A stretch of DNA of 64,000 nt from the IMG/VR virus record IMGVR_UViG_3300036770_007539, positions 186,001 through 250,000 of that record; one strand, 5' to 3'. Under the pieces are notes generated by a model that worked only from the letters and a program-made list of their open reading frames with translations, was not told where the DNA came from and made no database searches. Numbering within the stretch: position 1 is the stretch's first letter; the number at the start of each line of letters is the position of its first letter. The position numbers and the translations under genes are program-made. Positions 29,383-58,758 of the stretch are shown here, in pieces.

Positions 29383-29927
29383 ACGTAAATAATTTGCACG
29401 CATTAATAGTTTTAAGAAATCATGCGCAATCCATTCTTAATGGGGCAAGAGCTGATTTAAAATTAACTAAAGAAGAAAAGTCCTCATTAACGAATGGACT
29501 TAAAAAAGTTGATGAAGTTTTTATTAAAAACTTTGAAACTTGTGTAGAAGCATCTAATACATCTTCTAAAGTAAGAAGTTGGACATCTACCGAGAGTGAA
29601 GAAAGTGTTCTCTTGGGCGCTATGTCGTTAGTTAATACAGTGGCATCTGTTCACCCTGAAGCTCTTACAGATGAAATCAAAAAAGATATTCATCATGTAG
29701 CTGAATTAGTTGGTGTATTGCCCAAAACTTCAAATCATAAAGATGGACTCTTTTCAAGAGTAGATGCTACTGAGCAAAGAGATCGCTTGGTAGCAGCAGC
29801 CGTCAAGGGACTGGGAACAGAATCTGTAATAGCTGAAGATAAGGCTTCTGAAGTTGTCACGGTTCCAGTAGTTACCACGAAAGATAAGGCTGATAAAAAA
29901 GCAAAAAGAGGTCCTAAAAAGGCATGA
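29379..29927 (+). CDS. Hypothetical protein
   Basis: ORF with ATGA overlap; basic C-terminus. Confidence 0.65.
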   Translation: MNVNNLHALIVLRNHAQSILNGARADLKLTKEEKSSLTNGLKKVDEVFIKNFETCVEASNTSSKVRSWTSTESEESVLLGAMSLVNTVASVHPEALTDEIKKDIHHVAELVGVLPKTSNHKDGLFSRVDATEQRDRLVAAAVKGLGTESVIAEDKASEVVTVPVVTTKDKADKKAKRGPKKA

Positions 29928-30673
29928 GCTTAACAAGATCATTTTCAGACCATCAATTGGTTGTTCTGCAAGATGATGAATGGCTGGAGCGACAGCGAAT
30001 AGCTGGTCGCTCCGTTGTTTTTTGTCTAGAATCAGCCAAATCTATGATTGAAAATAGAAAAGAGTTGACCGTCTCTTCTTTAAAGGGTGAGGCAGTACTT
30101 TTAATGAAGGGCTTTGATTGCACTCAGGTTCTAACAAGAGATAAGTCTCATAAGTCTTCAGTTAACATTTATGTCAACGGTATCTTTAATAAAGAAGATG
30201 ATTCTTATAAGTTTCAAGACGGAGATCTTATAAAATTAGAAATAGCAAGTTCTCACAAGGGAGCCGTTGCTAAATCAATAATTACTGTAATCAAGGGCAA
30301 ATCAAAATCTTTTGCTCAAACTGAAATGTTAAAAGTATGTCAAAAGGCATTAGAAAATGCTATTGCACAAATTGAGGTAGGTAAAAGATTGGGGTCAATA
30401 GGTGCTGGCATAAAATATATTGTTAAAAATAGTTCATTTAGAATAGTTCAAGAACATTTTGGAAATGGCTTGGATGAAGATAATATTTTTGCTAATCCTG
30501 TAGTTTTAAACAAGTCTCAATTTAATACGGGAATTAGAATCCAGCCAGGCATGACTTTTACTGTGTCTCCAGCTTTATCAATAGATGGTAAACTAGGTTG
30601 CTGTTTTGAAAAAACAATTTTTGTTAATGAAAATAAAGTTGAAATAATAACTCCTTGGAGCGAGGTAAATTAA
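29924..30673 (+). CDS. Methionine aminopeptidase (M24) homologue lacking most metal ligands
   Basis: R.AG, DGDL, G.RL..IG, G.GL, I.PGMTFTV.P, FE.TI align with MetAP; ligand positions substituted. Confidence 0.8.
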   Translation: MSLTRSFSDHQLVVLQDDEWLERQRIAGRSVVFCLESAKSMIENRKELTVSSLKGEAVLLMKGFDCTQVLTRDKSHKSSVNIYVNGIFNKEDDSYKFQDGDLIKLEIASSHKGAVAKSIITVIKGKSKSFAQTEMLKVCQKALENAIAQIEVGKRLGSIGAGIKYIVKNSSFRIVQEHFGNGLDEDNIFANPVVLNKSQFNTGIRIQPGMTFTVSPALSIDGKLGCCFEKTIFVNENKVEIITPWSEVN

Positions 30674-30856
30674 ATGAAGATCTCTTTCGAGTCAGGTGAA
30701 TATGTGGAAGTTGTTCCAAACAAAGGAAATGTTGTGCTATCTATAGCATCAAAGCATCCTTCCAAACCAAAATCTTTACTTGTAAATTCAGCAGAGCTTA
30801 CGGTAGAGCAATTTAAACAATTATCATTAGATATCTTTCAGGAGAAAGAAATATGA
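30674..30856 (+). CDS. Hypothetical protein
   Basis: 60-aa ORF with GAGG RBS. Confidence 0.6.
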   Translation: MKISFESGEYVEVVPNKGNVVLSIASKHPSKPKSLLVNSAELTVEQFKQLSLDIFQEKEI

Positions 30857-31173
30857 CAATTAGTAAACGCACACGTCAAATGGTATCATCAGTTGATTCA
30901 CGCCGCATTCGCAATAATACACAGCGTGTATTGCTTGCACTCCTCCGAGCAGAAGGAGATTGGGTTCCTCGTACATCTGTGCGGGTGCGCAATGCTACTT
31001 CCCGCATGAGAGAACTTCGCCGTTCTGAATACGGAGGCTTTGATGTTCAGGTTGCCACAGCATCAGAGCTTGGTCGTCCAGGCGGTTCACGTCGAACTTA
31101 TTATCGAATCAACCCCCGCACAATTACCGCTGACCGCGTTGCGGTCGTAATGCGAGATGCCGTTACGGTTTGA
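30853..31173 (+). CDS. Arg-rich putative winged-helix DNA-binding protein
   Basis: RVLLALL...W...SRMRELRR..GG..V...Y.I pattern; AGGAG RBS; 21 Arg, 1 Lys. Confidence 0.6.
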   Translation: MTISKRTRQMVSSVDSRRIRNNTQRVLLALLRAEGDWVPRTSVRVRNATSRMRELRRSEYGGFDVQVATASELGRPGGSRRTYYRINPRTITADRVAVVMRDAVTV

Positions 31174-31206
31174 AAAATATAAAATCTTAAAATTATAAAC
31201 CAATAT

Positions 31207-31247
31207 AAATATAAAAGCCTACTAGATAATAGTAGGCTTTTATATTT
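31207..31247. terminator. Intrinsic terminator
   Basis: 18-bp perfect inverted repeat aaatataaaagcctacta-gataa-tagtaggcttttatattt. Confidence 0.85.
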
Positions 31248-31288
31248 GTTGCGCATATTATTGTATTTCTTGGTAGGGAATAACAACT

Positions 31289-32581: not shown

Positions 32582-35500
32582 ATGCCTCAATTTAGAAAAG
32601 AACAGCTTAATCTTTTAAGTGCAAATTGGTCTACATACACTTATTCTGCTGCCGCAGGAGACACATTCACTGATTTGCCCGCTGGATTTGAATCATCTAC
32701 GGTAACTCAAGTCTCCGGAGGAGAGACTTCTGGACCTACCAGGGGCATTGTTACTAGTGCTCCAGATAATTATATTAAATTGCGTTTGGAACAAGACGGA
32801 TCGTCATTAGTAAATAATGGCGTTATTTTTGGGAGATTAACTTATTTATCTGGGGTTTACACTCTTACCTATTACGTTCTTTCTGGCGGATCTGAGGTTT
32901 CTGCTACTTTGCCTGGCTCTGGAATTTACAATGTAACAATGTTATTTCCAGAAGTAATGAAACTTGAAGAGATACCATCAAATTCTACTATAACATTTGC
33001 ACAGTCAGAGGCGCTTGGCGGTTCAGGTGCAATTATCATTCCAGATGGTGGGAATATATCTGGCACTTATGCTTCTGATGTTTTTTGCGAAGGCAATGCC
33101 AATATAGTTGGCAATTTATGGGTTAAAGGAGATTTAATTGTAGATGGTGACTTAATTAACTCGGATGGGTATTCTGCCTCTATTGCAGGAGATCTTCGAG
33201 CAGTAAATTTGAATTTTGACAGGGCAGATACTAGTCAGCCGCAGGGAAATTTAAATGTTGGTGGCGATTTATTATTTTCAGAAAACATGTATTATAGACC
33301 CACTGCAGTTGGAACCGTTGATTTAACTGTAAATGGAAATATAATTGGCGGATCTTCGATTGGTTCCGAAATGAATTGTAATGGCTACGAAGACACTAAC
33401 GGGTTAAATGTTTTTGTTGGTGGTAATTTAATTGTTGGATATTTAGATGTTTCTGGTGGTGATGCAGATTCCATAGGTGCAGGTAATGGCGGAACTATCT
33501 TTGTTCGTGGTGATTTAAATGTTACTATTTATTTGTCTTCTTCTGGTGGCGATTCAGCTGCTGGACTTAACGCAGGAAACGCTGGAGAGATCATTGTTTA
33601 TGGAAACTTGTCCAATTCATACAATTCTGGATTTTTTGGCTCTGTATTACTGCTGGACGGCGGTGACTCTATTGGTGCAGACGCATCTGCTGGAAATGGT
33701 GGCACTTTAACAGTTTTTGGAAACGCCAATCTTAGATACTGTGATATGGTGGGAGGATATTGCGACTCGTCTATTGAATCTAATAATTCTGGTCAAGGTG
33801 GAAGTGTAAATATTTTTGGCTCAGCTGTTGCTTACAGCTTAGATGTTTCTGGCGGTGATAGAGGAGGCACTTTAACTGCAGAAGGTTCTGCTACTCCTCC
33901 ACACGCAGGCTCAATATTTATTCAAGGAAATTTAACTTCTTATGACGCTATTGGCGGAACAGGTGGAACAATTTCTTCATCAAATTTTGCCCCCAGTTTT
34001 GCGGGTGATGGCGCAGTGGTTTCAGTCGAAGGGGATTGCAATGCAGAAACAATACTAGTTTCTGGTGGGGATTTTATATTTTCCTCATCTCTTTCTTATG
34101 GGGCTGGAAATGCTGGAGATTTTGATGTTGGCGGCAATTTGTACTGCGGAAATATATATGCGGATGGAGGCAACTGCAGCTCCGGAACTAACGCTGGAAA
34201 TGGAGCAGATATTAGTATTTTAGGCTCTGCAAATTGTTATTTTATTTTCATGCCAGGCGGAAATGCTACTGAATCATCAGCAGGAGACGCTGGTTACTTA
34301 GAAATTAGAGGCAATTTTTTATGTTCTGAAATATCTATATATGGAGGGTCTTGTGACTCTTCTGTAGAAACTCATAATGCTGGACTTGGGGGATACATAG
34401 AATGCGACTCTTTTAACGTTGATAATTTTTCAATTTATGGAGGCACACGCTCAGGAGCCACAACTGTTTCATATGCTTCACAGCAGCCTAATGCTGGATC
34501 TATATTAGTAAGAGGGGATTTTCACTGTGAAGGATGGGCAGAATGTTTTGGTGGCGATGTTATTACGGATGAACCTAATGCTTTAGGTGGCGATGGTGCA
34601 AATATTGATATTTTTGGAAGTGCATATATGGCAACATTACAAGCTCAAGGGGGCAATTGTGATTTAAATCGTGGCGGTAATGGTGGCAATATTAGCATTG
34701 TTAGCGGGAATCTTAACATATCTAATCAATTTTTAATAAATGGAGGAGATTCTTCATATAATTCTTTTGGTGGTGGAAATGGCGGTTCTCTCTCTGTAAA
34801 TGGAAATTTGAACGGTAATATAGATCTTTTTGCCAAAGGAGGGGTTGGGACGGATGCGCCTGGTGGTTCTGGCGGAACAATTCAAATTAAAGGCAATGTT
34901 AATTTGCAAGAGCTAGATGTTAGTGGCGGGAGCAGTGTTTCCACTGATGGTTCATACTCAGCTGGAAATGGTGGGAGTATTACAATACAAGGTAATTCTA
35001 ACATTGAAGAAGCTTCTTTTTTTGGTGGAGAAGGAACTCAGGCTTCCGGTGGAAATGGCGGTAATTTTTATATTTATGGTATGGCTAATTCAATTTTTGT
35101 TATTGGCTTTGGTGGAAATTGCGATTCTGACTATGAAACTAATAGAGCTGGTACTGGCGGAAGTGTTTTCGCTCAATCGGCAGTATTTTATAATGTTGAT
35201 GTTTCTGGCGGTAATAGATTTGGAACTTTATCATCTTCCGGATCTCAATTACCTGCAGATAGTGGAAACATACAAATCAACGGCTCAATAACTGCCATGG
35301 ATATTTATGCAAATGGAGGCGCTATAAATACTCTTAATTTTGCACCTTCTTCTGCTGGCTCTGGGGGAAATATTCAAATAGGGGGAGTGGTCAATGTTTC
35401 TAGCGATATTGACCTTTATGGCGGAGATGCTTCGGTTGGCAACGCTGGAGATGGCGGAACGTTAAACGTTCCATACGGTAATGTTATAACTGAAGGAATA

Positions 35501-36511
35501 AATGCTAGCGGCGGACAATCTTCTCAAGGCTCTGGCGGTGATGGCGGAGGAATATATTGCACTTTTAGTGACGTTGGCGGAGTAATTTATCTAGATGGTG
35601 GAGATTCGGTTAATGGAAATGGCGGTAATGCTGGTGAGATATATGCATCAAGTATTCGTGCGTTTATTAGTTTAAGCGGTGGAAACTGCGATTCTTCAGA
35701 CGAAAATCACGTCGCTGGAAATGGCGGATATATTGCTTGCATTAATCTTGATGGCACTGACGTTTATATTGATGGCGGAGATCGATCTGGGTCCTTAGTT
35801 TCTTCTGGGTCTGTTCTTGTTGGACCATCTGCAGGAAGTGTAAATGTAAATGGACAGGTAAATTTGTTATATTTATATGGCAGAGGCGGGGACGTTACCA
35901 CAAATCTTAAATGCGCCCCAGGGGGGAATGGAGCTGAAGTTTTAATTGGTTTGGGCAATACAGTATCGTCCGCAAACATTGCATTTATAAATATCAGTGG
36001 GGGCGATAGTAATGGATATGATGGAGGTGCTTCTGGTCAGTTGAAAAGCACTGGTTCAGCGGTTATCAGTGAAGAATTATTAGCAGTAGGTGGAATATCT
36101 TATCCTTCTTTAGATGCGGCAGCAGCAAGGAATGGAATGGGACCTGCACTTGTCCAGTTTTCTGGCGGTGTAACCGCTAGATATGTTACTTTGCAAGATG
36201 GTTATGGATCTGGATCTCCCCCTTTAAACACTGGCTCTACAGAGGTTATTTTAAGGTTGGCTGGAAGTTGCACTTTTCATACTTTGGACATGACTAGTAG
36301 ACAAGGATTTATATTGCCGCACAATGATGACAGCACTCCTGCTTCTGTTATATTTAAGGTGCAAAATATGCCGGATAAATCTACTTTGAATGTTCCAGAA
36401 TTTACAGATCTTTTACGTTCTAATACTTCGGATATATCTTCTGACTTGGAAGATAGTGTTTTTATATCAGGTCAAGCTAATTGGTATAAATTAACAGGAA
36501 CAGCAATATAA
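32582..36511 (+). CDS. Large Gly-rich repeat (beta-solenoid-like) protein, putative tail fibre/adhesin
   Basis: Dozens of GGD/N...GNGG.I.V.GN repeats; acidic and very Lys-poor. Confidence 0.7.
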   Translation: MPQFRKEQLNLLSANWSTYTYSAAAGDTFTDLPAGFESSTVTQVSGGETSGPTRGIVTSAPDNYIKLRLEQDGSSLVNNGVIFGRLTYLSGVYTLTYYVLSGGSEVSATLPGSGIYNVTMLFPEVMKLEEIPSNSTITFAQSEALGGSGAIIIPDGGNISGTYASDVFCEGNANIVGNLWVKGDLIVDGDLINSDGYSASIAGDLRAVNLNFDRADTSQPQGNLNVGGDLLFSENMYYRPTAVGTVDLTVNGNIIGGSSIGSEMNCNGYEDTNGLNVFVGGNLIVGYLDVSGGDADSIGAGNGGTIFVRGDLNVTIYLSSSGGDSAAGLNAGNAGEIIVYGNLSNSYNSGFFGSVLLLDGGDSIGADASAGNGGTLTVFGNANLRYCDMVGGYCDSSIESNNSGQGGSVNIFGSAVAYSLDVSGGDRGGTLTAEGSATPPHAGSIFIQGNLTSYDAIGGTGGTISSSNFAPSFAGDGAVVSVEGDCNAETILVSGGDFIFSSSLSYGAGNAGDFDVGGNLYCGNIYADGGNCSSGTNAGNGADISILGSANCYFIFMPGGNATESSAGDAGYLEIRGNFLCSEISIYGGSCDSSVETHNAGLGGYIECDSFNVDNFSIYGGTRSGATTVSYASQQPNAGSILVRGDFHCEGWAECFGGDVITDEPNALGGDGANIDIFGSAYMATLQAQGGNCDLNRGGNGGNISIVSGNLNISNQFLINGGDSSYNSFGGGNGGSLSVNGNLNGNIDLFAKGGVGTDAPGGSGGTIQIKGNVNLQELDVSGGSSVSTDGSYSAGNGGSITIQGNSNIEEASFFGGEGTQASGGNGGNFYIYGMANSIFVIGFGGNCDSDYETNRAGTGGSVFAQSAVFYNVDVSGGNRFGTLSSSGSQLPADSGNIQINGSITAMDIYANGGAINTLNFAPSSAGSGGNIQIGGVVNVSSDIDLYGGDASVGNAGDGGTLNVPYGNVITEGINASGGQSSQGSGGDGGGIYCTFSDVGGVIYLDGGDSVNGNGGNAGEIYASSIRAFISLSGGNCDSSDENHVAGNGGYIACINLDGTDVYIDGGDRSGSLVSSGSVLVGPSAGSVNVNGQVNLLYLYGRGGDVTTNLKCAPGGNGAEVLIGLGNTVSSANIAFINISGGDSNGYDGGASGQLKSTGSAVISEELLAVGGISYPSLDAAAARNGMGPALVQFSGGVTARYVTLQDGYGSGSPPLNTGSTEVILRLAGSCTFHTLDMTSRQGFILPHNDDSTPASVIFKVQNMPDKSTLNVPEFTDLLRSNTSDISSDLEDSVFISGQANWYKLTGTAI

Positions 36512-40079: not shown

Positions 40080-41120
40080 ATGAAAATTTTATATGCCATT
40101 TCTGACAGACCCAGCGCTTGGTTGCAAGCCTCTATAGTGTTATCTGAGCTTAGAAGTCAGCATGAAGTCAAATTAGCAGGTTACAAAACTTTACATCCTT
40201 ATATTAAAAATATTGATTATAATCTTTCATCGCTATATACCGCAAGAGACTACGTTGGTAAAAAATACAACTTAACATTAAGTCCATGCAATGGTAAAGT
40301 TTTTTCTTCTTACATTAATCATATTAATGAATATTCTCCAGATTTAATAATTTCAGATCATGAGGAGTATACTTTGGCGGCTGGTCACATTTTAAAAATT
40401 AAAACATGGAATGTATCTCCATTAAATTTAATTTATCATTGGTTTCCAGTTGCCATGAGATATTATTATGATTTTATTTTATATTATTACAAAAGACAAA
40501 CATTAAGATACAATCGGGAATTTTTCTGGGGAAACATGAATATTACATATTCGCCCTTGTGTCATATGAAAATTCCAATGGATTGGAGAAATGATAAAAT
40601 AATATGGGTAAATCCATATACTCCAAAAGTTGAATTTATAGATTCCCCATGCAGTCAGTTACATACACATTTTAGACCTCAATTAGAATCTTACTTTGAT
40701 CAAGTACCTAGGATTGAAAATCAATTTAATCCAGATGTTACTTCTATAAAAGCAAGTAAGAATATTAATTTTTGCTCGGGAGAAAGTGGATATTTATATT
40801 CTTTGTTAAATAATCAATTTATTTTTGATAAAAATTCTTCTTACAGAGTTCATATTGTTCCTAACTTAAATGATATTGAAACAATAATGAATGCTGTTGT
40901 GATTAAAAATAATCAGGTAGGAATGGATCTTGGGCAAGTTGAAAATATGAAAGATTATTCAATTACTAGGATTGATTCAGTGTTAGATATGCCTGAAAGA
41001 ATGCCCTTAAATTTTAAATTATCTCACCTTCCCAAGTTTCGTAAATCAATAAAGTTTTCCTTATTAGAAAGGGTAAATTATCATGAAAGTCGTTTTGGAC
41101 ATAGGAAACGTCTTAGTTAA
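40080..41120 (+). CDS. Divergent GT-B-fold protein (MJ1255-like glycosyltransferase N-terminus)
   Basis: MKILYAI...HEV...SPDLIISDHE. Confidence 0.45.
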   Translation: MKILYAISDRPSAWLQASIVLSELRSQHEVKLAGYKTLHPYIKNIDYNLSSLYTARDYVGKKYNLTLSPCNGKVFSSYINHINEYSPDLIISDHEEYTLAAGHILKIKTWNVSPLNLIYHWFPVAMRYYYDFILYYYKRQTLRYNREFFWGNMNITYSPLCHMKIPMDWRNDKIIWVNPYTPKVEFIDSPCSQLHTHFRPQLESYFDQVPRIENQFNPDVTSIKASKNINFCSGESGYLYSLLNNQFIFDKNSSYRVHIVPNLNDIETIMNAVVIKNNQVGMDLGQVENMKDYSITRIDSVLDMPERMPLNFKLSHLPKFRKSIKFSLLERVNYHESRFGHRKRLS

Positions 41121-45563: not shown

Positions 45564-45797
45564 GTGAACAATATAAATAAACCATCTTTAATTTATTATA
45601 CTGTTAAATTAGAAGCAGACGTGCCAACTCTTATAGAATATAAAATCCTCGCTTCCTCTCCTGAGGAAGCTTTGGAGAAAATTAAAACTTCTAACGCAAT
45701 CGAATCTGTTAAACCTATTCTTCCAAAAATGAAAAGGAAAAACGCTAAAGTGTATAAGCGTGGAACTATTGAAATTCAAGCCTCTAAGAGATATTAA
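45564..45797 (+). CDS. Hypothetical protein
   Basis: GAGGA RBS, GTG start. Confidence 0.6.
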   Translation: MNNINKPSLIYYTVKLEADVPTLIEYKILASSPEEALEKIKTSNAIESVKPILPKMKRKNAKVYKRGTIEIQASKRY

Positions 45798-45798
45798 A

Positions 45799-46413
45799 AT
45801 GTCAGGATTAAAATATTATATCATAGATACTGAAACAACGGGGCTAAGCGCAAATTACCATGAGATAATTGAAATTTCAATTATCAGAGCCGATGATAAA
45901 CATCAACTAACTAAATTTATCAAAGCAGAATACCCTCAAAGAGCCTCCCCAGAAGCTTTAAAAGTTACAAATAAAACTCCCAAGGATTTATTAAGAGGAG
46001 AATCTAAAAATTCGGCAGTTGAAGCTATTGATTTATTTTTATCTCAAGATCAAAGCACTCCAGAGCATAGAGTTTTCGTAGCCCATAACGCTCCATTCGA
46101 TAGAAGATTTTGCCATGCTTTATGGTCAAGTGTAAATAAAATTTTTCCAGCTAATTGTTGGCTAGATACTAAGACCCTAGTAAAAGAAACTTTGGTTAAA
46201 AATGGAATCTCAAAACCTAAAGATTTAACTTTAAAGGGCGCCATGTCTCAAATTGGAGCAAAAGCATATGAGGGAGCCCACAACGCTCTTGTAGATTCTA
46301 GAAATTGTTATCTTTTGTGGAAGAAAGCAATGGATAATAATGTTAATTACTTGCCGCATATTAAACGATCCCCTCACGTTTTAAATGGAGACATGCCAGA
46401 TGAAGATGATTGA
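45799..46413 (+). CDS. DEDDh 3'-5' exonuclease (second DnaQ-like paralogue)
   Basis: DTETTG, AHNAPFD, HNALVD. Confidence 0.92.
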   Translation: MSGLKYYIIDTETTGLSANYHEIIEISIIRADDKHQLTKFIKAEYPQRASPEALKVTNKTPKDLLRGESKNSAVEAIDLFLSQDQSTPEHRVFVAHNAPFDRRFCHALWSSVNKIFPANCWLDTKTLVKETLVKNGISKPKDLTLKGAMSQIGAKAYEGAHNALVDSRNCYLLWKKAMDNNVNYLPHIKRSPHVLNGDMPDEDD

Positions 46414-46909
46414 GGCTAAAATTTATAACTTAATTATAAATGGAGTTATTGATTTTAAAGATGAAAATGAAGAAGATGTTGCAATTGATTTTTTAATAAC
46501 TTCAGCTCAAAAGCATCCAGAAATTTTACTATCTGTTATTGCAAAGGCTTTTACCTATGATTATATAGGTATGTCAATTCCGGCATTAGCAGCTTACTTA
46601 TGCAACTCTGACGGCAATCATTTTAATGATAAGATAAGATTTCATATTATAAATCTAATTGAATCTCTAGACCCTGCCGCCCTTCTGGAATTGGTAGAGT
46701 ATATAAAAAGTAAAGTTTTTAAAGGGGGACTGGGCTCTAAAAATCAAAAATTAATCAGAGAGGTGATGGAGAGATGGAGCTTAGATATATTAAAAAAATA
46801 TGCTACATCTTATCCCTCTGAATTGAAAACTTTATTAGAATTAATACATCCAAGATTTCAAGGTGAAAAAAGCTTTATTATTAAAACTGTAACTAATAAA
46901 AAGGTATAG
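46385..46909 (+). CDS. Hypothetical helical protein, possible partial TROVE (Ro60/Rsr-like) domain
   Basis: GGLGS...K.I....W.....KY.......LL.L.HP resembles the TROVE core. Confidence 0.35.
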   Translation: METCQMKMIEAKIYNLIINGVIDFKDENEEDVAIDFLITSAQKHPEILLSVIAKAFTYDYIGMSIPALAAYLCNSDGNHFNDKIRFHIINLIESLDPAALLELVEYIKSKVFKGGLGSKNQKLIREVMERWSLDILKKYATSYPSELKTLLELIHPRFQGEKSFIIKTVTNKKV

Positions 46910-47558: not shown

Positions 47559-47598
47559 AGAAACGCAGGGTTTTCGTTTCAAAATAAAAATAATAGCT

Positions 47599-47637
47599 TA
47601 TCATGGAGGGTAGCGCTTTTCGCTACCCTCCATGATA
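47599..47637. promoter_or_regulatory. GC-rich 17-bp perfect hairpin without U-tract
   Basis: tatcatggagggtagcg-ctttt-cgctaccctccatgata. Confidence 0.7.
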
Positions 47638-47663
47638 TATATTATGATGAAGGAGAAAGAAAA

Positions 47664-47843
47664 ATGACATATGAATATTTATGCACTAGTTGCAACCATC
47701 AGTGGGAAGCAGAACAATCTATTAAAGATGATTCTTTAAAAACCTGTCCCAAATGCGAAAATGAAACGGCTAAAAGATTAATTTCTAAATCTAGTTTCGT
47801 TCTACAAGGTAGTGGCTGGGCAAAAGACAACTATTCAAAATGA
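47664..47843 (+). CDS. FmdB-family zinc-ribbon protein (59 aa, absent from ORF track)
   Basis: Hand translation MTYEYLCTSCNHQWEAEQSIKDDSLKTCPKCENETAKRLISKSSFVLQGSGWAKDNYSK; AAGGAG RBS; ATGA overlap with next gene. Confidence 0.9.
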   Translation: MTYEYLCTSCNHQWEAEQSIKDDSLKTCPKCENETAKRLISKSSFVLQGSGWAKDNYSK

Positions 47844-48487
47844 TAAATAATCGCCAGGCTTTAATTCGGCTTGAAAAATGGATATTGTCTCAAGTCCCAG
47901 CAAACTATAAGGCAGCATGGGTTAACATAGATGAAACATCTGACATTAAACTGGATTGCAAGTTAATAGATGCATATCAAAAAAATCAGTCTATTGCATT
48001 AAAGCAAATTTGTTTAAAAAACAATATTCCTTTTATAACTTATACTGCAAGCCCATCTTTATCAGATAAAGATAGACTAAGTGAGTATTCCAAATTTTTA
48101 ATTTGGAAATCAGAAAATTACAACACTATTCTTTTTAGCAAGTTGTTAAAAGAGCATTTGTATTTTGGTGAGTATAAAAAATATTCTCTTGATAATTTAG
48201 ATTATTATCCTTTTATTAATTTTACTCAATCACAAGTCGATAGCATCGTTGAATTATTGCTTTCTGGAACGGATGTTGTTAGCCATCCTGTTAACTCTAT
48301 GTTAGAATGGTTATACATGCAGGATGTGCAATTTAAAGTAATTTCATCAAGTGATAGCCCTACAAAGCATTCTAGATGGGGAACTTACAGTTTAGAGCAA
48401 AAGTCTGTAATAGCTAAATATTTCGCTCTAGCCAGGAGCCGAGAACATAAAATAAAAAATTTAAACACTTTTAATTTTAATGATTAA
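47840..48487 (+). CDS. Degenerate NAD synthetase (NadE)-like protein lacking the PP-loop
   Basis: GEYKKYSLDNLDYYPFINFTQSQV resembles GFFTKYGDG.AD..PL..L.K.Q; C-terminal REHK resembles EHKR; no SGGxDS. Confidence 0.5.
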   Translation: MINNRQALIRLEKWILSQVPANYKAAWVNIDETSDIKLDCKLIDAYQKNQSIALKQICLKNNIPFITYTASPSLSDKDRLSEYSKFLIWKSENYNTILFSKLLKEHLYFGEYKKYSLDNLDYYPFINFTQSQVDSIVELLLSGTDVVSHPVNSMLEWLYMQDVQFKVISSSDSPTKHSRWGTYSLEQKSVIAKYFALARSREHKIKNLNTFNFND

Positions 48488-49010
48488 TAAAAATTTAGTT
48501 TCTTTAAAAGCGTCTAATCCAAATAATTTCCCGCCTTTAAAGTTTTTAATAGAATCATTTGGGATGAAGTCTAGCATTTGGACTCAGTGGGAAAATAATT
48601 TCGGAGATCAAATTTTAATATTTGATGATGGTCAAAAATTAAATTATAAATTTAAATTTAAAGATTTAAATGACTTATTACAATTTTCTACTTTTGGTAC
48701 AATGCTAAGCGCCTCTTCTTCATTGATTGGCTTGAAAAAAGCCAACACTTTAAAAGTTTTCTTTTTAGGAAAAGATAACTTTATTAGATTTTTTTATTAT
48801 GATGGTAGCGACTGGAGCATGCGCCATTTGTTTTCTGAATCTACTTCATTAATTTTTAATATTATCAAAATGTTTTTAGGTCTAGATGATTCTATTTCAA
48901 AAAATTTACATTATGAAGATATAGTGATTTTAACTCATCCGTTTGATGATTTGACTGAATATAGAAAAAACAATAATTTTAATGAACTTTGGAAAGAATT
49001 AGAGGATTAA
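48480..49010 (+). CDS. Hypothetical protein
   Basis: ORF overlapping upstream gene, abutting downstream gene. Confidence 0.55.
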   Translation: MINKNLVSLKASNPNNFPPLKFLIESFGMKSSIWTQWENNFGDQILIFDDGQKLNYKFKFKDLNDLLQFSTFGTMLSASSSLIGLKKANTLKVFFLGKDNFIRFFYYDGSDWSMRHLFSESTSLIFNIIKMFLGLDDSISKNLHYEDIVILTHPFDDLTEYRKNNNFNELWKELED

Positions 49011-49496: not shown

Positions 49497-49921
49497 ACTA
49501 CCTAGAACTAATTCAAATAATTAAAAAGCATCCAGTGGAGCCGGGTGAAATTCACCCGGCAGACGCTATCTTGAATCATATGGCGAAAAGTAGTAATGAT
49601 TATTTAGAATCTATCTACTTAATTTTTAACAGTTATCCAGAGCTTAGAGCGGATCTTTTTAAATTAATTTCTAGATTGGATAATAAATATTTAGATAATT
49701 TAGTTTTTTATAATTTGGCTAGAAGACATTTAAATGATTCTAATATTGAAGTTGTTGATGCTGCTATTGGAATGTTTGAATCTTTTTCTAATAAATCTTC
49801 TTTAAAAGAATGGTTAGATTGCAGCCCTAGTCAGCCCAAGTGGATTTTGGATTACGCTGTTCAAGTTTTAAATCAAGATTCTTCTTTGCATCTAATGGCT
49901 AACCATTCTACAAATTCATGA
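49493..49921 (+). CDS. Hypothetical helical (HEAT-like) protein
   Basis: HLNDSNIEVVDAAI motif; ATGA overlap. Confidence 0.5.
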   Translation: MNYLELIQIIKKHPVEPGEIHPADAILNHMAKSSNDYLESIYLIFNSYPELRADLFKLISRLDNKYLDNLVFYNLARRHLNDSNIEVVDAAIGMFESFSNKSSLKEWLDCSPSQPKWILDYAVQVLNQDSSLHLMANHSTNS

Positions 49922-50597: not shown

Positions 50598-51410
50598 CTA
50601 TTTCTTAGTAAGAAATTTAACAACTAAATAAATAAATTCTTTAATTAATTCAAATAATTTATTACTTGAGTTAATTTTTTCTATGGTGATATTAGAGACT
50701 TTTGATTGTCTTGTTTCTTTGGACTGTTCTGATGATGGTTCTGGTTCTGGGGTGGAAGGCAAAGTATTATGCGTTTCTTCCGTGGTGGTTTCTTTTTTAG
50801 GAATCGATTCTCTAACTGTTGGCGGTAAGCTATCTGGTAAGTCTTCAGATTCCTTTTCATAATTTTCGGGCACAAATGTCATAAACTCATTGCTTTTTTT
50901 ATCAAAAGACTTTGATAGTTTAATCATTAAATTAGTATAGTAATTTAAATCAGCTGTGAAGTATCCGCCTTCTTTTAATTTGGCGCAGTATTTAGGTATG
51001 CTGCCTTCTTTTAAGGCTTCTAATGCTGGCTGATACCTTTTCTTGTTTAGAAATTGTAAATAAGCCTTAGCGCCTTCTATTGGGCTGTCCCAGTGCTGGA
51101 AAAATGTTTGGGGGTGGTATGGTTCAAACCAATGAGTTTTACCATTTAAAATCTCATTGCATTTATATGACGTATATGTAACTCCTGGTTTTCTTTTAAT
51201 ATTCCCAAAATTATTGTTATAAATAAACTTTCCTCTACCTACCTCTAAAGAGGTATGACACCACAAAATACATAATTGTTCTTTTGTTATTTCTTGATTA
51301 TATAATTCTTTCCAAGCCTGCCTCAGATAAAAAGCTAGCTCATTTTCATTTAAAGATGTGATGACGGCATCTCTGAATAAAGGATCGTTGGGTCTGGTAG
51401 AATGGTCCAT
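50598..51410 (-). CDS. GH73/FlgJ-like peptidoglycan glucosaminidase with low-complexity C-terminal tail
   Basis: SLEVGRG, NNFGNIK, GYFTA..YY; Pro/Glu/Thr-rich linker. Confidence 0.72.
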   Translation of the reverse strand: MDHSTRPNDPLFRDAVITSLNENELAFYLRQAWKELYNQEITKEQLCILWCHTSLEVGRGKFIYNNNFGNIKRKPGVTYTSYKCNEILNGKTHWFEPYHPQTFFQHWDSPIEGAKAYLQFLNKKRYQPALEALKEGSIPKYCAKLKEGGYFTADLNYYTNLMIKLSKSFDKKSNEFMTFVPENYEKESEDLPDSLPPTVRESIPKKETTTEETHNTLPSTPEPEPSSEQSKETRQSKVSNITIEKINSSNKLFELIKEFIYLVVKFLTKK

Positions 51411-55920: not shown

Positions 55921-56268
55921 TTATGATAAATCCTTTGGGTTTTTTGTTGAGGGCTCTAGCCATGATGATGATTTTAATAATTCATCATGACCAATTACTG
56001 TTTTTGCATTTTGCCAAAAGTCCTTGGATACTTCTAAAAAGTCTTCCAGCGACATCCCTAATTCAATAGCGCAGTTGGCTGATAATGACAATAACACATT
56101 AAATATTGATATCGTGCTGTCATAATTATATTTTTTTTCATAACTTGAACCAACTTTATCTATTACTTCTAAAAATTTCTCCGCAAGAAGTTGATTGAAT
56201 TCTTCATGAATTTTTTCTATTTCTTCTTCGGACATTTTTGTTTTTTTATAAGTTTTTTTCTTAGTCAA
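55921..56268 (-). CDS. Hypothetical protein
   Basis: ORF in tight minus-strand operon; AAGGA RBS. Confidence 0.6.
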   Translation of the reverse strand: MTKKKTYKKTKMSEEEIEKIHEEFNQLLAEKFLEVIDKVGSSYEKKYNYDSTISIFNVLLSLSANCAIELGMSLEDFLEVSKDFWQNAKTVIGHDELLKSSSWLEPSTKNPKDLS

Positions 56269-56942
56269 AATATTTTCCTTTTTAATTTTTTACAAAGTCT
56301 ATAAATTCCTATTTCAGTTTTGGCGTCCGTTAAATAACCAGAGAGAATATGATTCAAAGCATCTTCTATTGATATTTTAAATGTTTGAGTATGTTTTTCT
56401 AATGGATGACCGTCACCAATAACTGGAACTTTATTTTCATTTTTTATCTCTATATCTAAAAAGAATAGCCTTTCCCCACCTGTACCTGAGAAAACTCTTT
56501 TTCCGAGAAATGACATTTCATCGGGATTTACAACCAAGCCTGTTTCTTCTTTTAATTCTCTGGCAGCTGCCATCTTATAGCCTTTTACCAGTTGTTTAGA
56601 TTCTTCTGGCTCCACAGCTCCTGCTGGCAATTCCCAAGTATTTCCAATTCCTACTTCTTCTGGAAAAGCCAAGTAATCTCCCGAACAAAAATCTTTTGTG
56701 GGTCGAAAGCAGCTTGTTAAATAAATGTGAGGTTCAGTCTCCAAGCTATAAGGTACAATAACTACTGCATCTAGAAACTTATTAAGTGCAAGGTCTAGCT
56801 CAAACTCCTCTGATACTTCTTGCGGATCTGTGTCGTATCGAATTACACCTTTTGTTTTCCAGATTTCATGCCATCCAGAATGAATAATTTTATAATCACT
56901 TAATTCTAATTTATGTTGTATGTGTGGTAATTTACAAGTCAT
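56265..56942 (-). CDS. NUDIX hydrolase (ADP-ribose pyrophosphatase-like)
   Basis: WELPAGAVE...AAARELKEETGL Nudix box with a short insertion; DAKT. Confidence 0.85.
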   Translation of the reverse strand: MTCKLPHIQHKLELSDYKIIHSGWHEIWKTKGVIRYDTDPQEVSEEFELDLALNKFLDAVVIVPYSLETEPHIYLTSCFRPTKDFCSGDYLAFPEEVGIGNTWELPAGAVEPEESKQLVKGYKMAAARELKEETGLVVNPDEMSFLGKRVFSGTGGERLFFLDIEIKNENKVPVIGDGHPLEKHTQTFKISIEDALNHILSGYLTDAKTEIGIYRLCKKLKRKIF

Positions 56943-57766
56943 TTTTGTATCTCCGGGCACCACCAAGTGGTTCTTTTGTCCAATGTTTCTTCTTTGAGAA
57001 TTTTCATATTATCGATTTGATTTTTACCATAAACTTTCAGGAAATTTTCAAAACCACCTTCTGCACCATTTGCATCTTTATAAGTCATTAAAGAAGCTCC
57101 CTGGAGATTATAACTTTCTTTTAAAACATTTTCAATAGATTCTTTTAAAAGTTCTAGTTCATTATCAGATAGAGATAAGCCCGTTCGATGAGGGCTTAAT
57201 TTTGCTCTGAACAAAGCTTCAGCTTTGACATAATTTCCAACCCCAGAAATATTCTTTTGATTCATCAAAATTTCTGGCAAAGTTTTGTCTTGTTTGATTT
57301 TCTTGTTAAAATCTTCTTGAGATGGAGGCGAATTTAACATGTCAGGTCCAATGGAGTTTAATTTTTCTTGCAATTCTTTTTCAGTCACTCGTTTAATTGT
57401 TCCGAAGTGCCTAGTATCATTAAAATAAATAATTTCTCGAATATTTATTCCTGGTTCAAAAGGCAATGATAAATGAATTCCAACTCCACTGTGTTTGCTT
57501 GGATTAAACTGCCAAGCCCCGCTCATTCCTAGAGTAGAAATCAGGTTAGTCGAATCAGATAATTTCCAATATATAAACTTGCCCTTACAATTAATCGCTT
57601 TAATAATTGGATATTGGCAATTGTTTAATTCTTCTTGAAATTTTGATAAAGAAATATCGGGTTTAGTTTTGAATCTGCCTCCGATTAGATCTAGTTTAAT
57701 TATTTTTGAATTTTCGATCTTTTTAATTTGATCGACAATAGTTCTTACTTCAGCGCCTTCAGGCAT
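56939..57766 (-). CDS. Fpg/Nei family DNA glycosylase
   Basis: N-terminal MPEG, KGK, LGMSG, D.RHFG, H2TH SGVGNY..E.LF, C-terminal RTTWWCP..Q. Confidence 0.92.
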   Translation of the reverse strand: MPEGAEVRTIVDQIKKIENSKIIKLDLIGGRFKTKPDISLSKFQEELNNCQYPIIKAINCKGKFIYWKLSDSTNLISTLGMSGAWQFNPSKHSGVGIHLSLPFEPGINIREIIYFNDTRHFGTIKRVTEKELQEKLNSIGPDMLNSPPSQEDFNKKIKQDKTLPEILMNQKNISGVGNYVKAEALFRAKLSPHRTGLSLSDNELELLKESIENVLKESYNLQGASLMTYKDANGAEGGFENFLKVYGKNQIDNMKILKEETLDKRTTWWCPEIQK

Positions 57767-57789
57767 TGCATATCTTCCTTTAATTCAAA

Positions 57790-58089
57790 TCAAGAAATGT
57801 TATTAATTTTTTTCTTATTTTGTAAAAATGTAAGAGATTCAAGATCGTCTGTTTTGTTTAATACTTTTTTCTGTTGCTCTCTTAATGCAACTTCAATTTC
57901 GCAGCTAATTAATTTAGGATACAAATCCAATACGTCTTGGGCATTAAAATTCCCTGGACCCATTAAATCTTCCAAAATGACTTTGCAAGTTTTCAATGTT
58001 TCATAGCAAAGAGAGGCGCCTTCTTTTGCATAAATTAAGTAATCGGTCTTCTTTTCTAATTCAACTAATCTATCTTTAAATGACGACAT
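57790..58089 (-). CDS. Hypothetical protein
   Basis: AGGAG RBS. Confidence 0.6.
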   Translation of the reverse strand: MSSFKDRLVELEKKTDYLIYAKEGASLCYETLKTCKVILEDLMGPGNFNAQDVLDLYPKLISCEIEVALREQQKKVLNKTDDLESLTFLQNKKKINNIS

Positions 58090-58097
58090 AATTCTCC

Positions 58098-58313
58098 TTA
58101 ACTGTTTTTACATGACCAACATTTGAAATGTGGTTTAAGTTCCGCATAAGGATAAAACTCAAAACAACTTTGACAAGTCGCCCCTGTAACTTGGCAAGTA
58201 TCAAATACAGGCAATTTAACAGAAAAATCAAACTCTAATTGTTGATTAGAGTTTTGATTTTTAAGTTTATTAATCATTTTTTCTTGTAAAATTTCTATAT
58301 CTTTATCAATCAT
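58098..58313 (-). CDS. Small Cys-rich (CxxC...CxxC) protein
   Basis: CQSC...CWSC. Confidence 0.6.
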   Translation of the reverse strand: MIDKDIEILQEKMINKLKNQNSNQQLEFDFSVKLPVFDTCQVTGATCQSCFEFYPYAELKPHFKCWSCKNS

Positions 58314-58758
58314 TTTTTCTCTTTTTATATGAATAAGTGTCTCCGCTTATATGATTTGAAACTTCTATATATTTTACATCTGTTACAGCCGAAATGCTGT
58401 AAATTGTTTCAGGATATATTTCATAAGCGTCGTCTGGGAGTAATTTTATAGTATGCGATGAATTGCCTTTTTCTACAAAAAGATCCATTCTACCTGAGAT
58501 TATGAAAAAAGTTTTTATGGTATTTTTATGAAACTTTTTAGTTAAAATAGTTCTTCTTTTCAAGAAGATATTTTTAGCTATATATAATCTATTGTTTGTC
58601 CAGCGGCTTTCTTCGCCCCACAAGAACTTTTCTTTTTTTATTGAAATTTTTTTTGTTATTATTTTGTTTTGGTTCAAATAATGAACATATATCTTTACAA
58701 GATAAAGATAGCTAAAAATTCCAAATAAAAAAAAAAAAATACCACTCAGCCCAGCCAA
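58306..58758 (-). CDS. Membrane-anchored cupin (mannose-6-P-isomerase C-terminal-like), degenerate metal site; 5' end crosses a T13 tract
   Basis: WG.E...Y..K.I...FH....T...SG...EVS cupin pattern; N-terminal hydrophobic segment. Confidence 0.65.
   Translation of the reverse strand: MAGLSGIFFFLFGIFSYLYLVKIYVHYLNQNKIITKKISIKKEKFLWGEESRWTNNRLYIAKNIFLKRRTILTKKFHKNTIKTFFIISGRMDLFVEKGNSSHTIKLLPDDAYEIYPETIYSISAVTDVKYIEVSNHISGDTYSYKKRKND

What the first reader, a model, noticed from the sequence alone, without database searches (positions are those of the whole stretch)
29924..58758. Pattern: several intact but active-site-eroded enzyme homologues in one genome segment
Seen: MetAP-like (29924), NadE-like (47840), cupin (58306) and possibly MJ1255-like GT (40080), GT9-like (4091) and TROVE-like (46385) ORFs keep fold-level motifs and operon coupling but lack key catalytic residues or domains. 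None has an internal stop. Inference: systematic exaptation of host enzymes as binding proteins, decoys or structural parts, as described for large eukaryotic DNA viruses but less so for phages.
Basis: inference. Interest (0 to 1): 0.62.

Follow-up and report, generated by a model that had tools for sequence, protein, structure and literature searches.

The report
Jumbo-phage inactive methionine aminopeptidase homologue
A 300-kb phage from a subsurface metagenome carries a conserved, catalytically dead copy of the enzyme that trims the first methionine from proteins, descended from an intact phage version, and probably a second dead enzyme (NAD-synthetase-like); the claimed genome-wide pattern of six such genes does not hold.

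Summary
The window is bases 186001-250000 of a 301-kb IMG/VR jumbo-phage record (TubZ tubulin, UvsW, DnaB, RNR, an 18-kb glycan cluster).

- **MetAP-like ORF (29924-30673): firmly confirmed.** It matches Peptidase_M24 (E 1e-16) but keeps 1 of 5 metal ligands. It has also lost H79 and H178 and an ~18-residue hairpin. Twelve relatives share these losses. The 42 nearest other relatives keep 5/5 ligands (one 4/5), including an intact orthologue at the syntenic locus of a related phage. The eroded clade is monophyletic, on the longest internal branch, with short crown branches and pN well below pS.
- **NadE-like ORF (47840-48487): probable.** A family profile hits NadE (E 8e-4) and the top fold matches are PP-loop ATPases (Z 8.3-5). 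The SGGxDS loop is absent in all 7 members.
- **Cupin (58306-58758): ambiguous.** It has a cupin fold, keeps 1 of 4 canonical metal ligands, and has an N-terminal hydrophobic helix and many invariant polar residues. It may be a metal-free enzyme.
- **MJ1255-like GT, GT9-like and TROVE-like ORFs: erosion not shown.** The fold evidence is weak or failed.
- **Controls.** About 31 other enzyme or NTPase homologues are recognisable, and all 17 that were motif-checked are intact.

These are two or three separate cases, not a systematic pattern.

The parts
29924..30673 (+). MetAP-like pseudoenzyme (249 aa), type-I M24 pita-bread homologue. The positions of the metal ligands are E106, K117, N181, S215 and E229, and only E229 is kept. 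H79 is replaced by N89 and H178 by F189. The hairpin equivalent to E. coli ~210-227 is deleted. C226-C227 are nearly invariant within the clade.
   Evidence: PF00557 E 9.7e-17; PDB MetAPs E 2.7e-16; alignments; tree; dN 0.30, pN 0.25, pS 0.59 against the IMG/VR relative.
29379..29927 (+). Upstream ORF (182 aa, no family hit). Its stop overlaps the MetAP-like start by 4 bases. It evolves fast (48% identity to the relative).
   Evidence: conserved in L008 and L010.
30674..31173 (+). Two small conserved ORFs (60 aa and 106 aa) directly downstream of the MetAP-like gene. They are syntenic in all related contigs, including the one with the intact MetAP.
   Evidence: hyp106 is 46% identical in L005 and 82-88% in closer relatives.
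47840..48487 (+). NadE-like protein (215 aa) with an adenine-nucleotide alpha-hydrolase fold and no PP-loop. The central NadE segment is conserved (E105, G110, K113, D121, P124, S131), and so is the C-terminal part.
   Evidence: A2 profile against 3fiu E 7.9e-4; VIA Z 8.3-5 to GMP synthetase, NadE, LarE, PAPS reductase and TilS; all-viral NAD synthase cluster TM 0.46/0.40; no SGGxDS motif or GG pair; 51% identity, dN 0.45.
47664..47843 (+). Zinc-ribbon ORF (59 aa) with two CxxC pairs. Its stop overlaps the NadE-like start. An inverted repeat lies upstream at about 47600-47640.
   Evidence: The similar ORF at 24902-25192 corresponds to genes called PF09723 Zn_ribbon_8 in relatives.
48480..49010 (+). 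Downstream ORF (176 aa, no family hit) overlapping the NadE-like stop by 8 bases. It evolves fast (49% identity).
58306..58758 (-). Small cupin (150 aa) with an N-terminal hydrophobic helix. In motif 1 the first His is K/R/S (variable), H77 is kept, and the Glu ligand is K82 (invariant). In motif 2 the His is S/I/L at position 121. Invariant residues include H77, K78, K82, H102, E113, Y115, E117 and Y120.
   Evidence: phrog_7851 E 3.1e-11; Cupin_2 or Cupin_1 hits among orthologues; alignment A3; motif registration against 7zvm.
58098..58313 (-). Cys-rich ORF (71 aa) overlapping the cupin stop by 8 bases.
   Evidence: 63% identical in the relative.
40080..41120 (+). GT-B-like protein (346 aa). 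Only the N-terminal ~105-115 residues match MJ1255/PF13528 profiles. Residues 111-175 form an aromatic-rich segment that is ~90% conserved. Erosion is not demonstrated.
   Evidence: 70% identity, dN 0.21.
4091..5068 (+). The 'GT9-like' ORF (325 aa), embedded in the glycan-synthesis cluster. It has no detectable family, and its relatives are viral hypothetical proteins.
46385..46909 (+). The 'TROVE-like' ORF (174 aa, or 169 aa from the Met at 46400). It is a helical protein about one third the size of a TROVE protein and overlaps the end of a DEDD exonuclease gene.
   Evidence: 48% identity, dN 0.41.
45760..46413 (+). RNase T/DEDDh exonuclease with intact motifs, translationally coupled to the TROVE-like ORF.
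   Evidence: PF00929 E 3e-15; motifs.

Best explanation
The segment belongs to a ~300-kb jumbo phage. It contains two, possibly three, independent pseudoenzyme-type genes among a majority of ordinary, intact phage enzymes.

MetAP-like gene, what is shown. A phage lineage carried a type-I methionine aminopeptidase with all catalytic residues at a fixed locus (RNR, three small ORFs, MetAP, then ORFs of 60 and 106 aa). In one descendant clade a single episode of rapid change did three things. It replaced four of the five ligands of the dinuclear metal site. It removed the substrate-positioning histidines (H79, H178). It deleted the lysine-rich hairpin that carries W221. After that episode the protein evolved slowly under purifying selection.

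MetAP-like gene, what is inferred. The protein cannot bind the two metals or hydrolyse a peptide bond. The invariant Lys/Arg at the former D108 position probably pairs with the retained E229 and E/D106 and fills the empty metal site, keeping the pita-bread fold stable. The protein now acts as a non-catalytic binding or scaffold module. Its most constrained surface is the N-terminal extension and first helix (residues ~5-35), which it inherited from its active phage ancestors.

The phage also encodes an intact peptide deformylase, so a role connected with N-terminal protein processing is the most economical guess. The partner is unknown.

NadE-like protein. It is most likely a descendant of a (phage) NAD synthetase that kept the NadE core and C-terminal elements and lost the ATP-pyrophosphatase PP-loop. 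It probably binds a nucleotide-like ligand, or a partner, without adenylating it.

Other ORFs. The cupin lacks the canonical metal triad or tetrad, but it may be a metal-independent enzyme or a sensor anchored in the membrane. The two GT-like ORFs and the TROVE-like ORF are not shown to be eroded.
For: Phage identity.

MetAP-like gene:
- Family match.
- Site table: 13 of 13 clade members keep 1-2 of 5 ligands, against 5/5 in 41 and 4/5 in 1 of the 42 nearest other relatives.
- Hairpin absent in 13/13 clade members and present in all intact relatives.
- Orthologous locus with an intact MetAP in a related 119.6-kb contig, with homologous flanks.
- Tree: monophyly SH-aLRT 100, stem 0.74 (the longest internal branch), crown branches 0.06-0.28, nested at support 89 among intact sequences.
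- Selection: pN 0.25 against pS 0.59 and no stops; residues 21-30 are 94% column-identical.
- Only one PF00557 match in the 301-kb record.
- Peptide deformylase with EGCLS and HEIDH intact.
- Phage dependence on MetAP activity: Labrie et al. 2019, as cited in PMC8829019.

NadE-like gene.

Cupin.

Intact controls. Recognisable enzymes have dN 0.03-0.19, against 0.28-0.45 for the MetAP-like, NadE-like, TROVE-like and cupin ORFs.
Against: - No biochemical or structural data exist. Loss of activity is inferred from residue identity alone.
- No model of the MetAP-like protein was made, because the two fold jobs went to other ORFs. The Lys-fills-the-site idea is therefore untested.
- The NadE-like model has low confidence (pLDDT 64). 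Foldseek gave no hit below E 0.13, and VIA Z values of 7-8 are in the range the tool itself calls 'middling'. The NadE profile hit covers only 60 residues.
- dS is saturated, so dN/dS values are rough.
- All relatives come from metagenomes, and no RNA data show expression.
- The flagged genes evolve no faster than many unannotated neighbours, so their rate alone does not mark them as special.
- The deleted hairpin overlaps what is thought to be the ribosome-docking loop of bacterial MetAP (10.1101/312850; the residue mapping is from memory). This argues against the simplest binding model, in which the protein sits at the ribosome exit as MetAP does.
Confidence: 0.72

Rival explanations
1. The 'eroded' proteins are still enzymes with changed chemistry. 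The MetAP-like protein would be a metal-independent hydrolase or transferase, as creatinase is within the M24 fold, perhaps using the clade-specific Cys-Cys pair. The cupin would be a metal-free sugar isomerase or epimerase, and the NadE-like protein would use another nucleotide-binding mode.
For: Each family has many invariant polar residues. The cupin has H77, K78, K82, H102, E113, Y115, E117 and Y120. The NadE-like family has E105, K113, D121 and others. The MetAP-like clade has C226-C227, E229 and K117. The cupin lies near a sugar-nucleotidyl transferase and a Nudix gene. Metal-free cupins and the metal-free M24 enzyme creatinase are established knowledge, recalled from memory.
Against: In the MetAP-like clade the former ligand positions vary freely (D97: E/D/T/S/C; H171: N/I/V/L/S/Y/C; E204: S/A/C). 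The pocket elements H79, H178 and the W221 hairpin are gone, so the old pocket is not conserved as a pocket. The PP-loop region is the least conserved part of the NadE-like family. These genes have dN 2-10 times that of the clear enzymes.
Confidence: 0.17
2. One reading: there is a systematic, genome-wide tendency of this phage to convert captured host enzymes into binders, decoys or structural parts, including all six named ORFs.
For: Two or three cases lie within 30 kb. The E-to-K change in the cupin and the D-to-K change in the MetAP-like protein are parallel replacements of a metal-binding carboxylate by lysine.
Against: Three of the six assignments could not be supported. All 17 motif-checked enzymes are intact. 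The MetAP ancestor was already phage-borne. The frequency is about that expected for enzyme families in general.
Confidence: 0.07
3. These are decaying genes or assembly artefacts: relics drifting neutrally that happen still to be open.
For: The flagged genes are among the faster-evolving genes of the segment.
Against: pN is well below pS in every case. Thirteen MetAP-like, seven NadE-like and nine cupin sequences from different samples are all open. Rates are strongly uneven along the proteins, and crown branches are short. The locus is identical in contigs of three runs, although these are from one study and may be the source.
Confidence: 0.02

Closest known systems
Ebp1/PA2G4 and Arx1 (eukaryotic MetAP-fold pseudoenzymes; PMC7005732, PMC3888471)
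   Same: They have an M24 pita-bread fold that lost its metal ligands and peptidase activity, and they are retained under selection as binding proteins.
   Different: They derive from type-II MetAP, carry the type-II insert, and bind the 80S/60S ribosome tunnel exit. The phage protein derives from a short type-I MetAP, is viral, and has lost the lysine-rich hairpin thought to dock bacterial MetAP on the ribosome. The same binding mode cannot therefore be assumed. The similarity is convergent, not family membership.
Bacterial type-I methionine aminopeptidase (E. coli Map; T. maritima 1o0x)
   Same: Homologous over the full length (E 1e-16 to 1e-13), with the same domain size. E235 and the GMTFT and AG motifs are kept.
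   Different: Four of the five metal ligands, H79, H178 and residues ~210-227 are lost, and there is an extra N-terminal extension. It is not expected to be a peptidase.
Phage-encoded N-terminal processing enzymes (cyanophage peptide deformylase, PMC3660681) and the intact phage MetAPs found here (P0014, P0030-P0044)
   Same: The same theme of phages carrying genes of the N-terminal maturation pathway. This phage also has an intact deformylase. The intact phage MetAPs are the direct sister group and share the N-terminal extension.
   Different: Those proteins keep their catalytic residues; this clade does not.
NH3-dependent NAD synthetase NadE / PP-loop ATP pyrophosphatases (3fiu, 3p52, 2ywb)
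   Same: The central segment aligns with Francisella NadE (E 8e-4), and the overall alpha/beta fold has PP-loop ATPases as its top matches.
   Different: There is no SGGxDS PP-loop, the protein is ~35-60 residues shorter, and it has no PF02540 match. No NAD-pathway partner genes are present in the phage record.
Cupin_2 / small bacterial cupins (7zvm, 7zvy), PHROG 7851 'cysteine dioxygenase'
   Same: The two-motif beta-barrel signature is recognisable, and it is a small single-domain protein.
   Different: It keeps one of the four canonical ligands, with Lys in place of the Glu ligand, and it has an N-terminal hydrophobic helix.

Membership tests
Peptidase M24 / methionine aminopeptidase type I | Sequence-profile match to the pita-bread domain | tested here: met
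   PF00557 61.9 bits against a cut-off of 23. The MetAP equivalog models are all far below their cut-offs, e.g. TIGR00500 79.8 against 171.
Peptidase M24 / methionine aminopeptidase type I | Five ligands of the dinuclear metal centre (E. coli D97, D108, H171, E204, E235) | tested here: not met
   The window protein has E106, K117, N181, S215 and E229, so one of five is kept. The same holds in 13 of 13 clade members.
Peptidase M24 / methionine aminopeptidase type I | Substrate and transition-state histidines H79 and H178, and S1-pocket W221 | tested here: not met
   N89 and F189 replace the histidines, and the hairpin that carries W221 is deleted.
Pseudoenzyme (a selected, non-catalytic descendant of an enzyme) | Descent from catalytically competent ancestors | tested here: met
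   The clade is nested among intact relatives, and an intact orthologue sits at the syntenic locus.
Pseudoenzyme (a selected, non-catalytic descendant of an enzyme) | Maintained by purifying selection | tested here: met
   pN 0.25 against pS 0.59; 13 open copies; short crown branches; a 94% conserved N-terminal block.
Pseudoenzyme (a selected, non-catalytic descendant of an enzyme) | Demonstrated absence of catalysis | not testable with these tools
   This needs an enzyme assay and a metal analysis.
NAD synthetase (NadE) / PP-loop ATP pyrophosphatase | SGGxDS PP-loop after strand beta-1 | tested here: not met
   No such motif and no Gly-Gly pair in 7 of 7 members. The window copy has no glycine in residues 1-60, and residues 31-40 are the least conserved block.
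NAD synthetase (NadE) / PP-loop ATP pyrophosphatase | Profile or fold similarity to the family | tested here: inconclusive
   For: 3fiu E 7.9e-4 over 60 residues; VIA Z 8.3-5 with PP-loop ATPases at the top; a viral NAD synthase cluster at TM 0.46. Against: no PF02540 hit; Foldseek E 0.13 or worse; model pLDDT 64.
Cupin superfamily (metal-binding type) | Motif 1 HxH...E and motif 2 His metal ligands | tested here: not met
   K/R/S (variable), H77 kept, K82 in place of Glu, S/I/L at position 121.
Cupin superfamily (metal-binding type) | Profile match to cupin domains | tested here: inconclusive
   phrog_7851 E 3e-11. Cupin_2 in 4 of 9 members, best E 9.5e-4 and below the cut-off. No Cupin_2 match in the genome-wide six-frame search.
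MJ1255/VC2487 glycosyltransferase (GT-B) | Full-length match above the family cut-off, including the donor-binding C-terminal domain | tested here: not met
   TIGR00661 24 bits against 195.9, covering residues 63-123 only. PF13528 matches only residues 1-105. No PDB profile hit.
MJ1255/VC2487 glycosyltransferase (GT-B) | GT-B two-Rossmann fold | tested here: inconclusive
   The AF2 model has pLDDT 31 and is unusable.
Glycosyltransferase family 9 | Match to PF01075 | tested here: not met
   No hit. The only lead is an Atlas feature neighbour in which 10% of members carry PF01075.
TROVE / Ro60 | TROVE domain match, ~350-aa HEAT ring plus vWA domain | tested here: not met
   No PF05731 match. The ORF is 174 aa, and its neighbours are an exonuclease and a coiled-coil ORF. 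The only support is TM 0.50-0.57 from a model with pLDDT 0.59.

The most novel reading that the evidence does not exclude
The eroded MetAP clade would be the first viral (prokaryotic-virus) M24 pseudoenzyme. In this reading it works with the phage's intact peptide deformylase as a non-cleaving factor that binds N-termini or acts near the ribosome. It might, for example, shield selected phage proteins from host methionine excision, or interfere with host MetAP. That would make it a bacterial-virus counterpart of Ebp1/Arx1, evolved independently from a type-I enzyme. The PP-loop-less NadE-like protein would likewise act as a nucleotide-binding sponge or sensor rather than a synthetase.
Probability: 0.12. 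Interest if true: 0.72.

Novelty: new variant of a known kind. Interest (0 to 1): 0.45.

Why it matters
Pseudoenzymes are well documented in eukaryotes and their large viruses but are rarely traced in phages. The literature searches here found no phage MetAP or phage pseudo-MetAP.

This case gives an unusually clean natural experiment. The active and inactive forms sit at the same locus in related jumbo phages, and the data fit a single transition. The case therefore offers paired proteins for testing what a metal-free pita-bread scaffold is used for.

It also shows that some jumbo phages carry their own MetAP as well as a deformylase. That fits the reported dependence of phages on host methionine excision.

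For annotation, the lesson is practical. These proteins are labelled 'methionine aminopeptidase' in source databases, and that label is probably wrong for this clade.

Tried and rejected
- **Split Ro60 gene.** I tested whether the TROVE-like ORF is a fragment of a split Ro60 gene (217 + 174 + 137 aa). This is rejected: the upstream ORF is an RNase T exonuclease and the downstream ORF is a coiled-coil/hydrophobic protein. Rfam finds no Y RNA or any other family in the window, and there are no tRNAs.
- **Structure of the MJ1255-like GT.** The AF2 model with 5 sequences gave pLDDT 31, so no fold search was run on it.
- **PDB profile searches.** The GT, GT9-like and TROVE-like alignments gave nothing, or chance-level annexin hits.
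- **Foldseek PDB search of the NadE-like model.** No hit below E 0.13.
- **hhalign of A2 against E. coli NadE.** It aligned only 39 columns at E 0.008, with probability 5%.
- **Alignment-based scans of viral contigs** for distant NadE-like or cupin relatives returned only the one known contig.
- **Searching the 119.6-kb contig** that carries the intact MetAP for a NadE-like gene was not possible, because the record is not held.
- **NAD-salvage context.** There is no NAPRTase/Nampt or NMNAT in the record.
- **Expression.** No RNA runs hold the locus.
- **Crude motif patterns** for the methyltransferase and FEN found nothing, which is uninformative.
- **Megablast of 20 kb against the phage collection** gave no match.

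Full report
**What the window is.**
The 64-kb window is bases 186001-250000 of a single 301,007-bp IMG/VR virus record, estimated 71% complete. It is about 31% G+C and densely coded. It encodes a TubZ-type tubulin, UvsW and DnaB helicases, both ribonucleotide reductase subunits, an IMPDH/GMP-reductase homologue and DHFR. It also encodes two DEDD exonucleases, FEN, UvdE, Fpg/Nei, Nudix and several peptidoglycan hydrolases, plus an 18-kb glycan-synthesis cluster. The only hit in the phage collection is a 23.5%-identity match of the tubulin to Bacillus phage G. The DNA occurs in subsurface metagenomes. This is a divergent jumbo phage.

**The observation, ORF by ORF.**
All six ORFs are open and translationally coupled to their neighbours. 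Sequence-family searches recognise only some of them.
- The MetAP-like ORF matches PF00557 at E 9.7e-17.
- The cupin matches phrog_7851 at E 3e-11.
- The N-terminus of the GT at 40080 matches TIGR00661 at E 1.9e-5 and PF13528 at E 0.0055, both far below their cut-offs.
- The NadE-like, GT9-like and TROVE-like ORFs have no hit in Pfam, NCBIfam or PHROGs.

**MetAP-like gene (29924-30673): the losses.**
I aligned it with E. coli Map (taken from NC_000913) and with 13 homologues from the word-index search.
- The five metal ligands D97, D108, H171, E204 and E235 read E106, K117, N181, S215 and E229 in the window protein.
- H79 reads N89 and H178 reads F189.
- An ~18-residue hairpin (E. coli ~210-227, containing DGWTV) is missing.
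- Twelve other sequences at 48-72% identity share all of this.
- The former ligand positions vary freely among them (D97: E/D/T/S/C; H171: N/I/V/L/S/Y/C; E204: S/A/C). The D108 position is always Lys or Arg, and E235 is always kept.

**MetAP-like gene: comparison with intact relatives.**
The exhaustive profile-library search found 740 relatives. Of the 42 nearest full-length ones outside the clade, 41 keep 5/5 ligands and one keeps 4/5. All of them keep the hairpin.

The closest intact relative is P0014 (37% identity). It lies on a 119.6-kb contig in the same gene order as the window: UvsW, IstB-like, DnaB, zinc ribbon, RNR large subunit, small ORFs, MetAP, small ORFs. Its flanking genes are homologous to the window's (hyp130 39%, hyp106 46%). 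The intact and eroded genes are therefore orthologues at one phage locus.

**MetAP-like gene: evolution.**
A maximum-likelihood tree (the quick IQ-TREE search; the careful search did not finish) gives these results:
- The 13 eroded sequences are monophyletic, SH-aLRT 100.
- They sit on the longest internal branch, 0.74 changes per site.
- Crown branches are short, 0.06-0.28.
- The clade is nested, at support 89, with ten intact sequences.

This is the expected signature of one loss event, a burst of change, and then renewed constraint. Two further observations agree with that.
- Against the collinear IMG/VR relative (58% identity), pN is 0.25 and pS is 0.59, and there are no stops.
- Conservation is uneven along the protein, with residues 21-30 at 94% column identity.

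The conserved N-terminal extension and helix (DD.WLE.QR.AG) are shared with the intact sisters. That feature therefore predates the loss of catalysis.

**MetAP-like gene: genomic setting.**
The 301-kb record holds no second M24 gene. It does hold a peptide deformylase with EGCLS and HEIDH intact. The locus sequence is identical in contigs from three runs of one study, which may be the source of the assembly and so are not independent.

**NadE-like gene (47840-48487).**
Seven family members (49-100% identity) were aligned. The evidence for a NadE origin is as follows.
- Their profile hits Francisella NadE/NMN synthetase 3fiu at E 7.9e-4. The match covers residues 89-148, the segment that in NadE runs from the strand before the Mg-binding Glu through the GxxTKxGDG-like loop to the LxKxQV helix.
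- An AF2 model (pLDDT 64) gave no Foldseek hit below E 0.13, though many PP-loop enzymes appear in the list.
- The Foldseek-independent aligner ranked GMP synthetase (Z 8.3 and 7.3), NAD synthetases (7.0, 6.6, 6.1, 6.0), LarE, PAPS reductase and TilS at the top.
- The ESM Atlas shape search returned an all-viral NAD synthase family as the match with the lowest rmsd.

The fold assignment is therefore probably right, but at moderate confidence.

The defining PP-loop is absent. No member has an SGGxDS-like motif or even a Gly-Gly pair. The window copy has no glycine in residues 1-60. The stretch after strand beta-1 is the least conserved block.

The gene evolves fast (51% identity, dN 0.45) but stays open in all the samples. 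The record has no PF02540, NAPRTase or NMNAT gene. A 59-aa CxxC zinc-ribbon ORF is coupled upstream.

**Cupin (58306-58758, minus strand).**
Eight homologues (54-70% identity) all have an N-terminal hydrophobic helix. Cupin_2 or Cupin_1 profiles are hit weakly in several members.

I registered motif 1 on the 7zvm cupin.
- The first His is a variable K/R/S.
- The second His is kept (H77).
- The Glu ligand is an invariant Lys (K82).
- The motif-2 His is S/I/L.

The canonical metal site is therefore absent. The family nevertheless has many invariant polar residues, and metal-free cupin enzymes are common (from my own knowledge). I regard 'eroded' as unproven for this ORF.

**The three 'possible' ORFs.**
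- *GT at 40080.* All five orthologues hit PF13528 through the N-terminal ~105-115 residues only. Residues 111-175 are ~90% conserved and residues 176-260 only ~56%. There is no PDB profile hit and the model failed. At 70% identity and dN 0.21 it behaves like an ordinary enzyme. Erosion is not shown.
- *GT9-like ORF.* It sits inside the glycan cluster between GT2 genes. Its nearest Atlas neighbours are large viral families of hypothetical proteins. There is no PF01075 signal anywhere in the record.
- *TROVE-like ORF.* It is a 174-aa helical protein. A low-confidence Atlas model resembles part of viral TROVE proteins. This is a lead only, and TROVE is not an enzyme.

**Is there a pattern?**
Roughly 31 other ORFs in the window have enzyme or NTPase family hits. 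I checked signature motifs in 17 and all are intact. Their dN against the relative is 0.03-0.19, compared with 0.28-0.45 for the MetAP-like, NadE-like, TROVE-like and cupin ORFs. The flagged genes do belong to the fast class. So do many unannotated neighbours, such as hyp182, hyp426, hyp322 and hyp176. Two or three eroded genes among ~34 is not an unusual share. The evidence supports separate events, not a systematic tendency.

**Mechanism.**
Shown:
- loss of ligands, histidines and hairpin;
- a single origin from an intact phage gene;
- purifying selection afterwards.

Inferred:
- the protein is metal-free and inactive;
- the invariant Lys/Arg at the D108 position compensates for the missing metals;
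- the protein serves as a binding module through its conserved N-terminal region.

A link to N-terminal processing is suggested by the intact deformylase, and by the known dependence of phages on host MetAP (Labrie et al. 2019, via PMC8829019).

The deleted hairpin coincides with the positively charged loop proposed to dock bacterial MetAP on the ribosome (Sandikci et al. 2013, as cited in 10.1101/312850). The residue mapping K211-K226 and the role of W221 in the S1 pocket are from my memory. An Ebp1-like position at the tunnel exit (PMC7005732) is therefore only a minority possibility.

**Limits and compliance.**
There is no assay, no structure of the MetAP-like protein, no expression data and no known host. 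dS is saturated.

No alternative genetic code was applied by me; the TAG=Q remark on L011 is the tool's own.

Noticed in passing
window 104-18096: An 18-kb glycan-synthesis cluster in a phage. It holds a dockerin/EF-hand-like protein, GT4, two GT2, an 896-aa GT, a GT11 (fucosyltransferase family), two polysaccharide pyruvyl transferases, two methyltransferases, GDP-mannose 4,6-dehydratase and two NAD-dependent epimerases. This suggests synthesis of a GDP-fucose-type sugar and a pyruvylated, methylated glycan.
   Followed up: partly
window 18691-20010: A TubZ/PhuZ-like tubulin (PF00091 plus TubZ-like_C, signature GGGSGAG), 23.5% identical to a Bacillus phage G gene. It is conserved at the same place in relatives (L008).
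   Followed up: partly
window 32582-36511: A 1309-aa ORF with no Pfam or PHROG hit, locally raised G+C (0.40 against ~0.31) and strong GC skew. It is present in L008 (1306 aa) and L010 (1320 aa), shorter in L009 (940 aa), and absent from the collinear IMG/VR relative L002.
   Followed up: no
G000:C1:66728-67129 (outside the window; L017): A phage-encoded peptide deformylase (PF01327 E 1.2e-29) with EGCLS and HEIDH intact and motif 1 reading GIGLACPQ.
   Followed up: yes
L005 5208-9011: In the related phage that has the intact MetAP, the RNR large subunit is a different, intein-containing gene (1267 aa, Intein_splicing plus LAGLIDADG). It is only 25% identical to the window's, and no small-subunit gene is called beside it.
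   Followed up: no
L011 217-1020: An intact MetAP sister (P0030) lies on a 1-kb contig whose gene translates to the recorded protein only with TAG read as Gln. This hints that some phages of this wider group use a recoded stop codon.
   Followed up: no
window 39407-40054 and 45760-46413: Two paralogous DEDDh (RNase T-type) exonucleases with intact motifs, about 6 kb apart.
   Followed up: partly
window 56939-57766 (-): An Fpg/Nei glycosylase with the N-terminal Pro-Glu but only one Cys near the C-terminus, so it apparently lacks the usual four-Cys zinc finger (a 'zincless finger' type).
   Followed up: no
window 56265-56966 (-): A Nudix protein whose Nudix box has a longer spacer than the canonical seven residues between the Gly-x5-Glu and the RELKEETG part.
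   Followed up: no
window 24902-25192, 47664-47843 and 58098-58313 (-): Three small CxxC-rich zinc-ribbon-like ORFs. Two of them are translationally coupled to flagged genes (NadE-like and cupin). The first is 72% identical even in the distant L005 lineage, making it the most conserved protein of that comparison.
   Followed up: no
window 44792-45571 (-), 49873-50592 (-), 50598-51410 (-): Three different peptidoglycan hydrolase types lie within 7 kb: M23 with HxxxD and HxH intact, Amidase_2, and a glucosaminidase. The M23 gene is among the fastest-evolving genes (40% identity to the relative).
   Followed up: no
window 47596-47640: A G+C-rich inverted repeat (ggagggtagcg...cgctaccctcc) in the 105-base gap before the zinc-ribbon/NadE-like operon. 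It is a likely terminator or regulatory hairpin.
   Followed up: no
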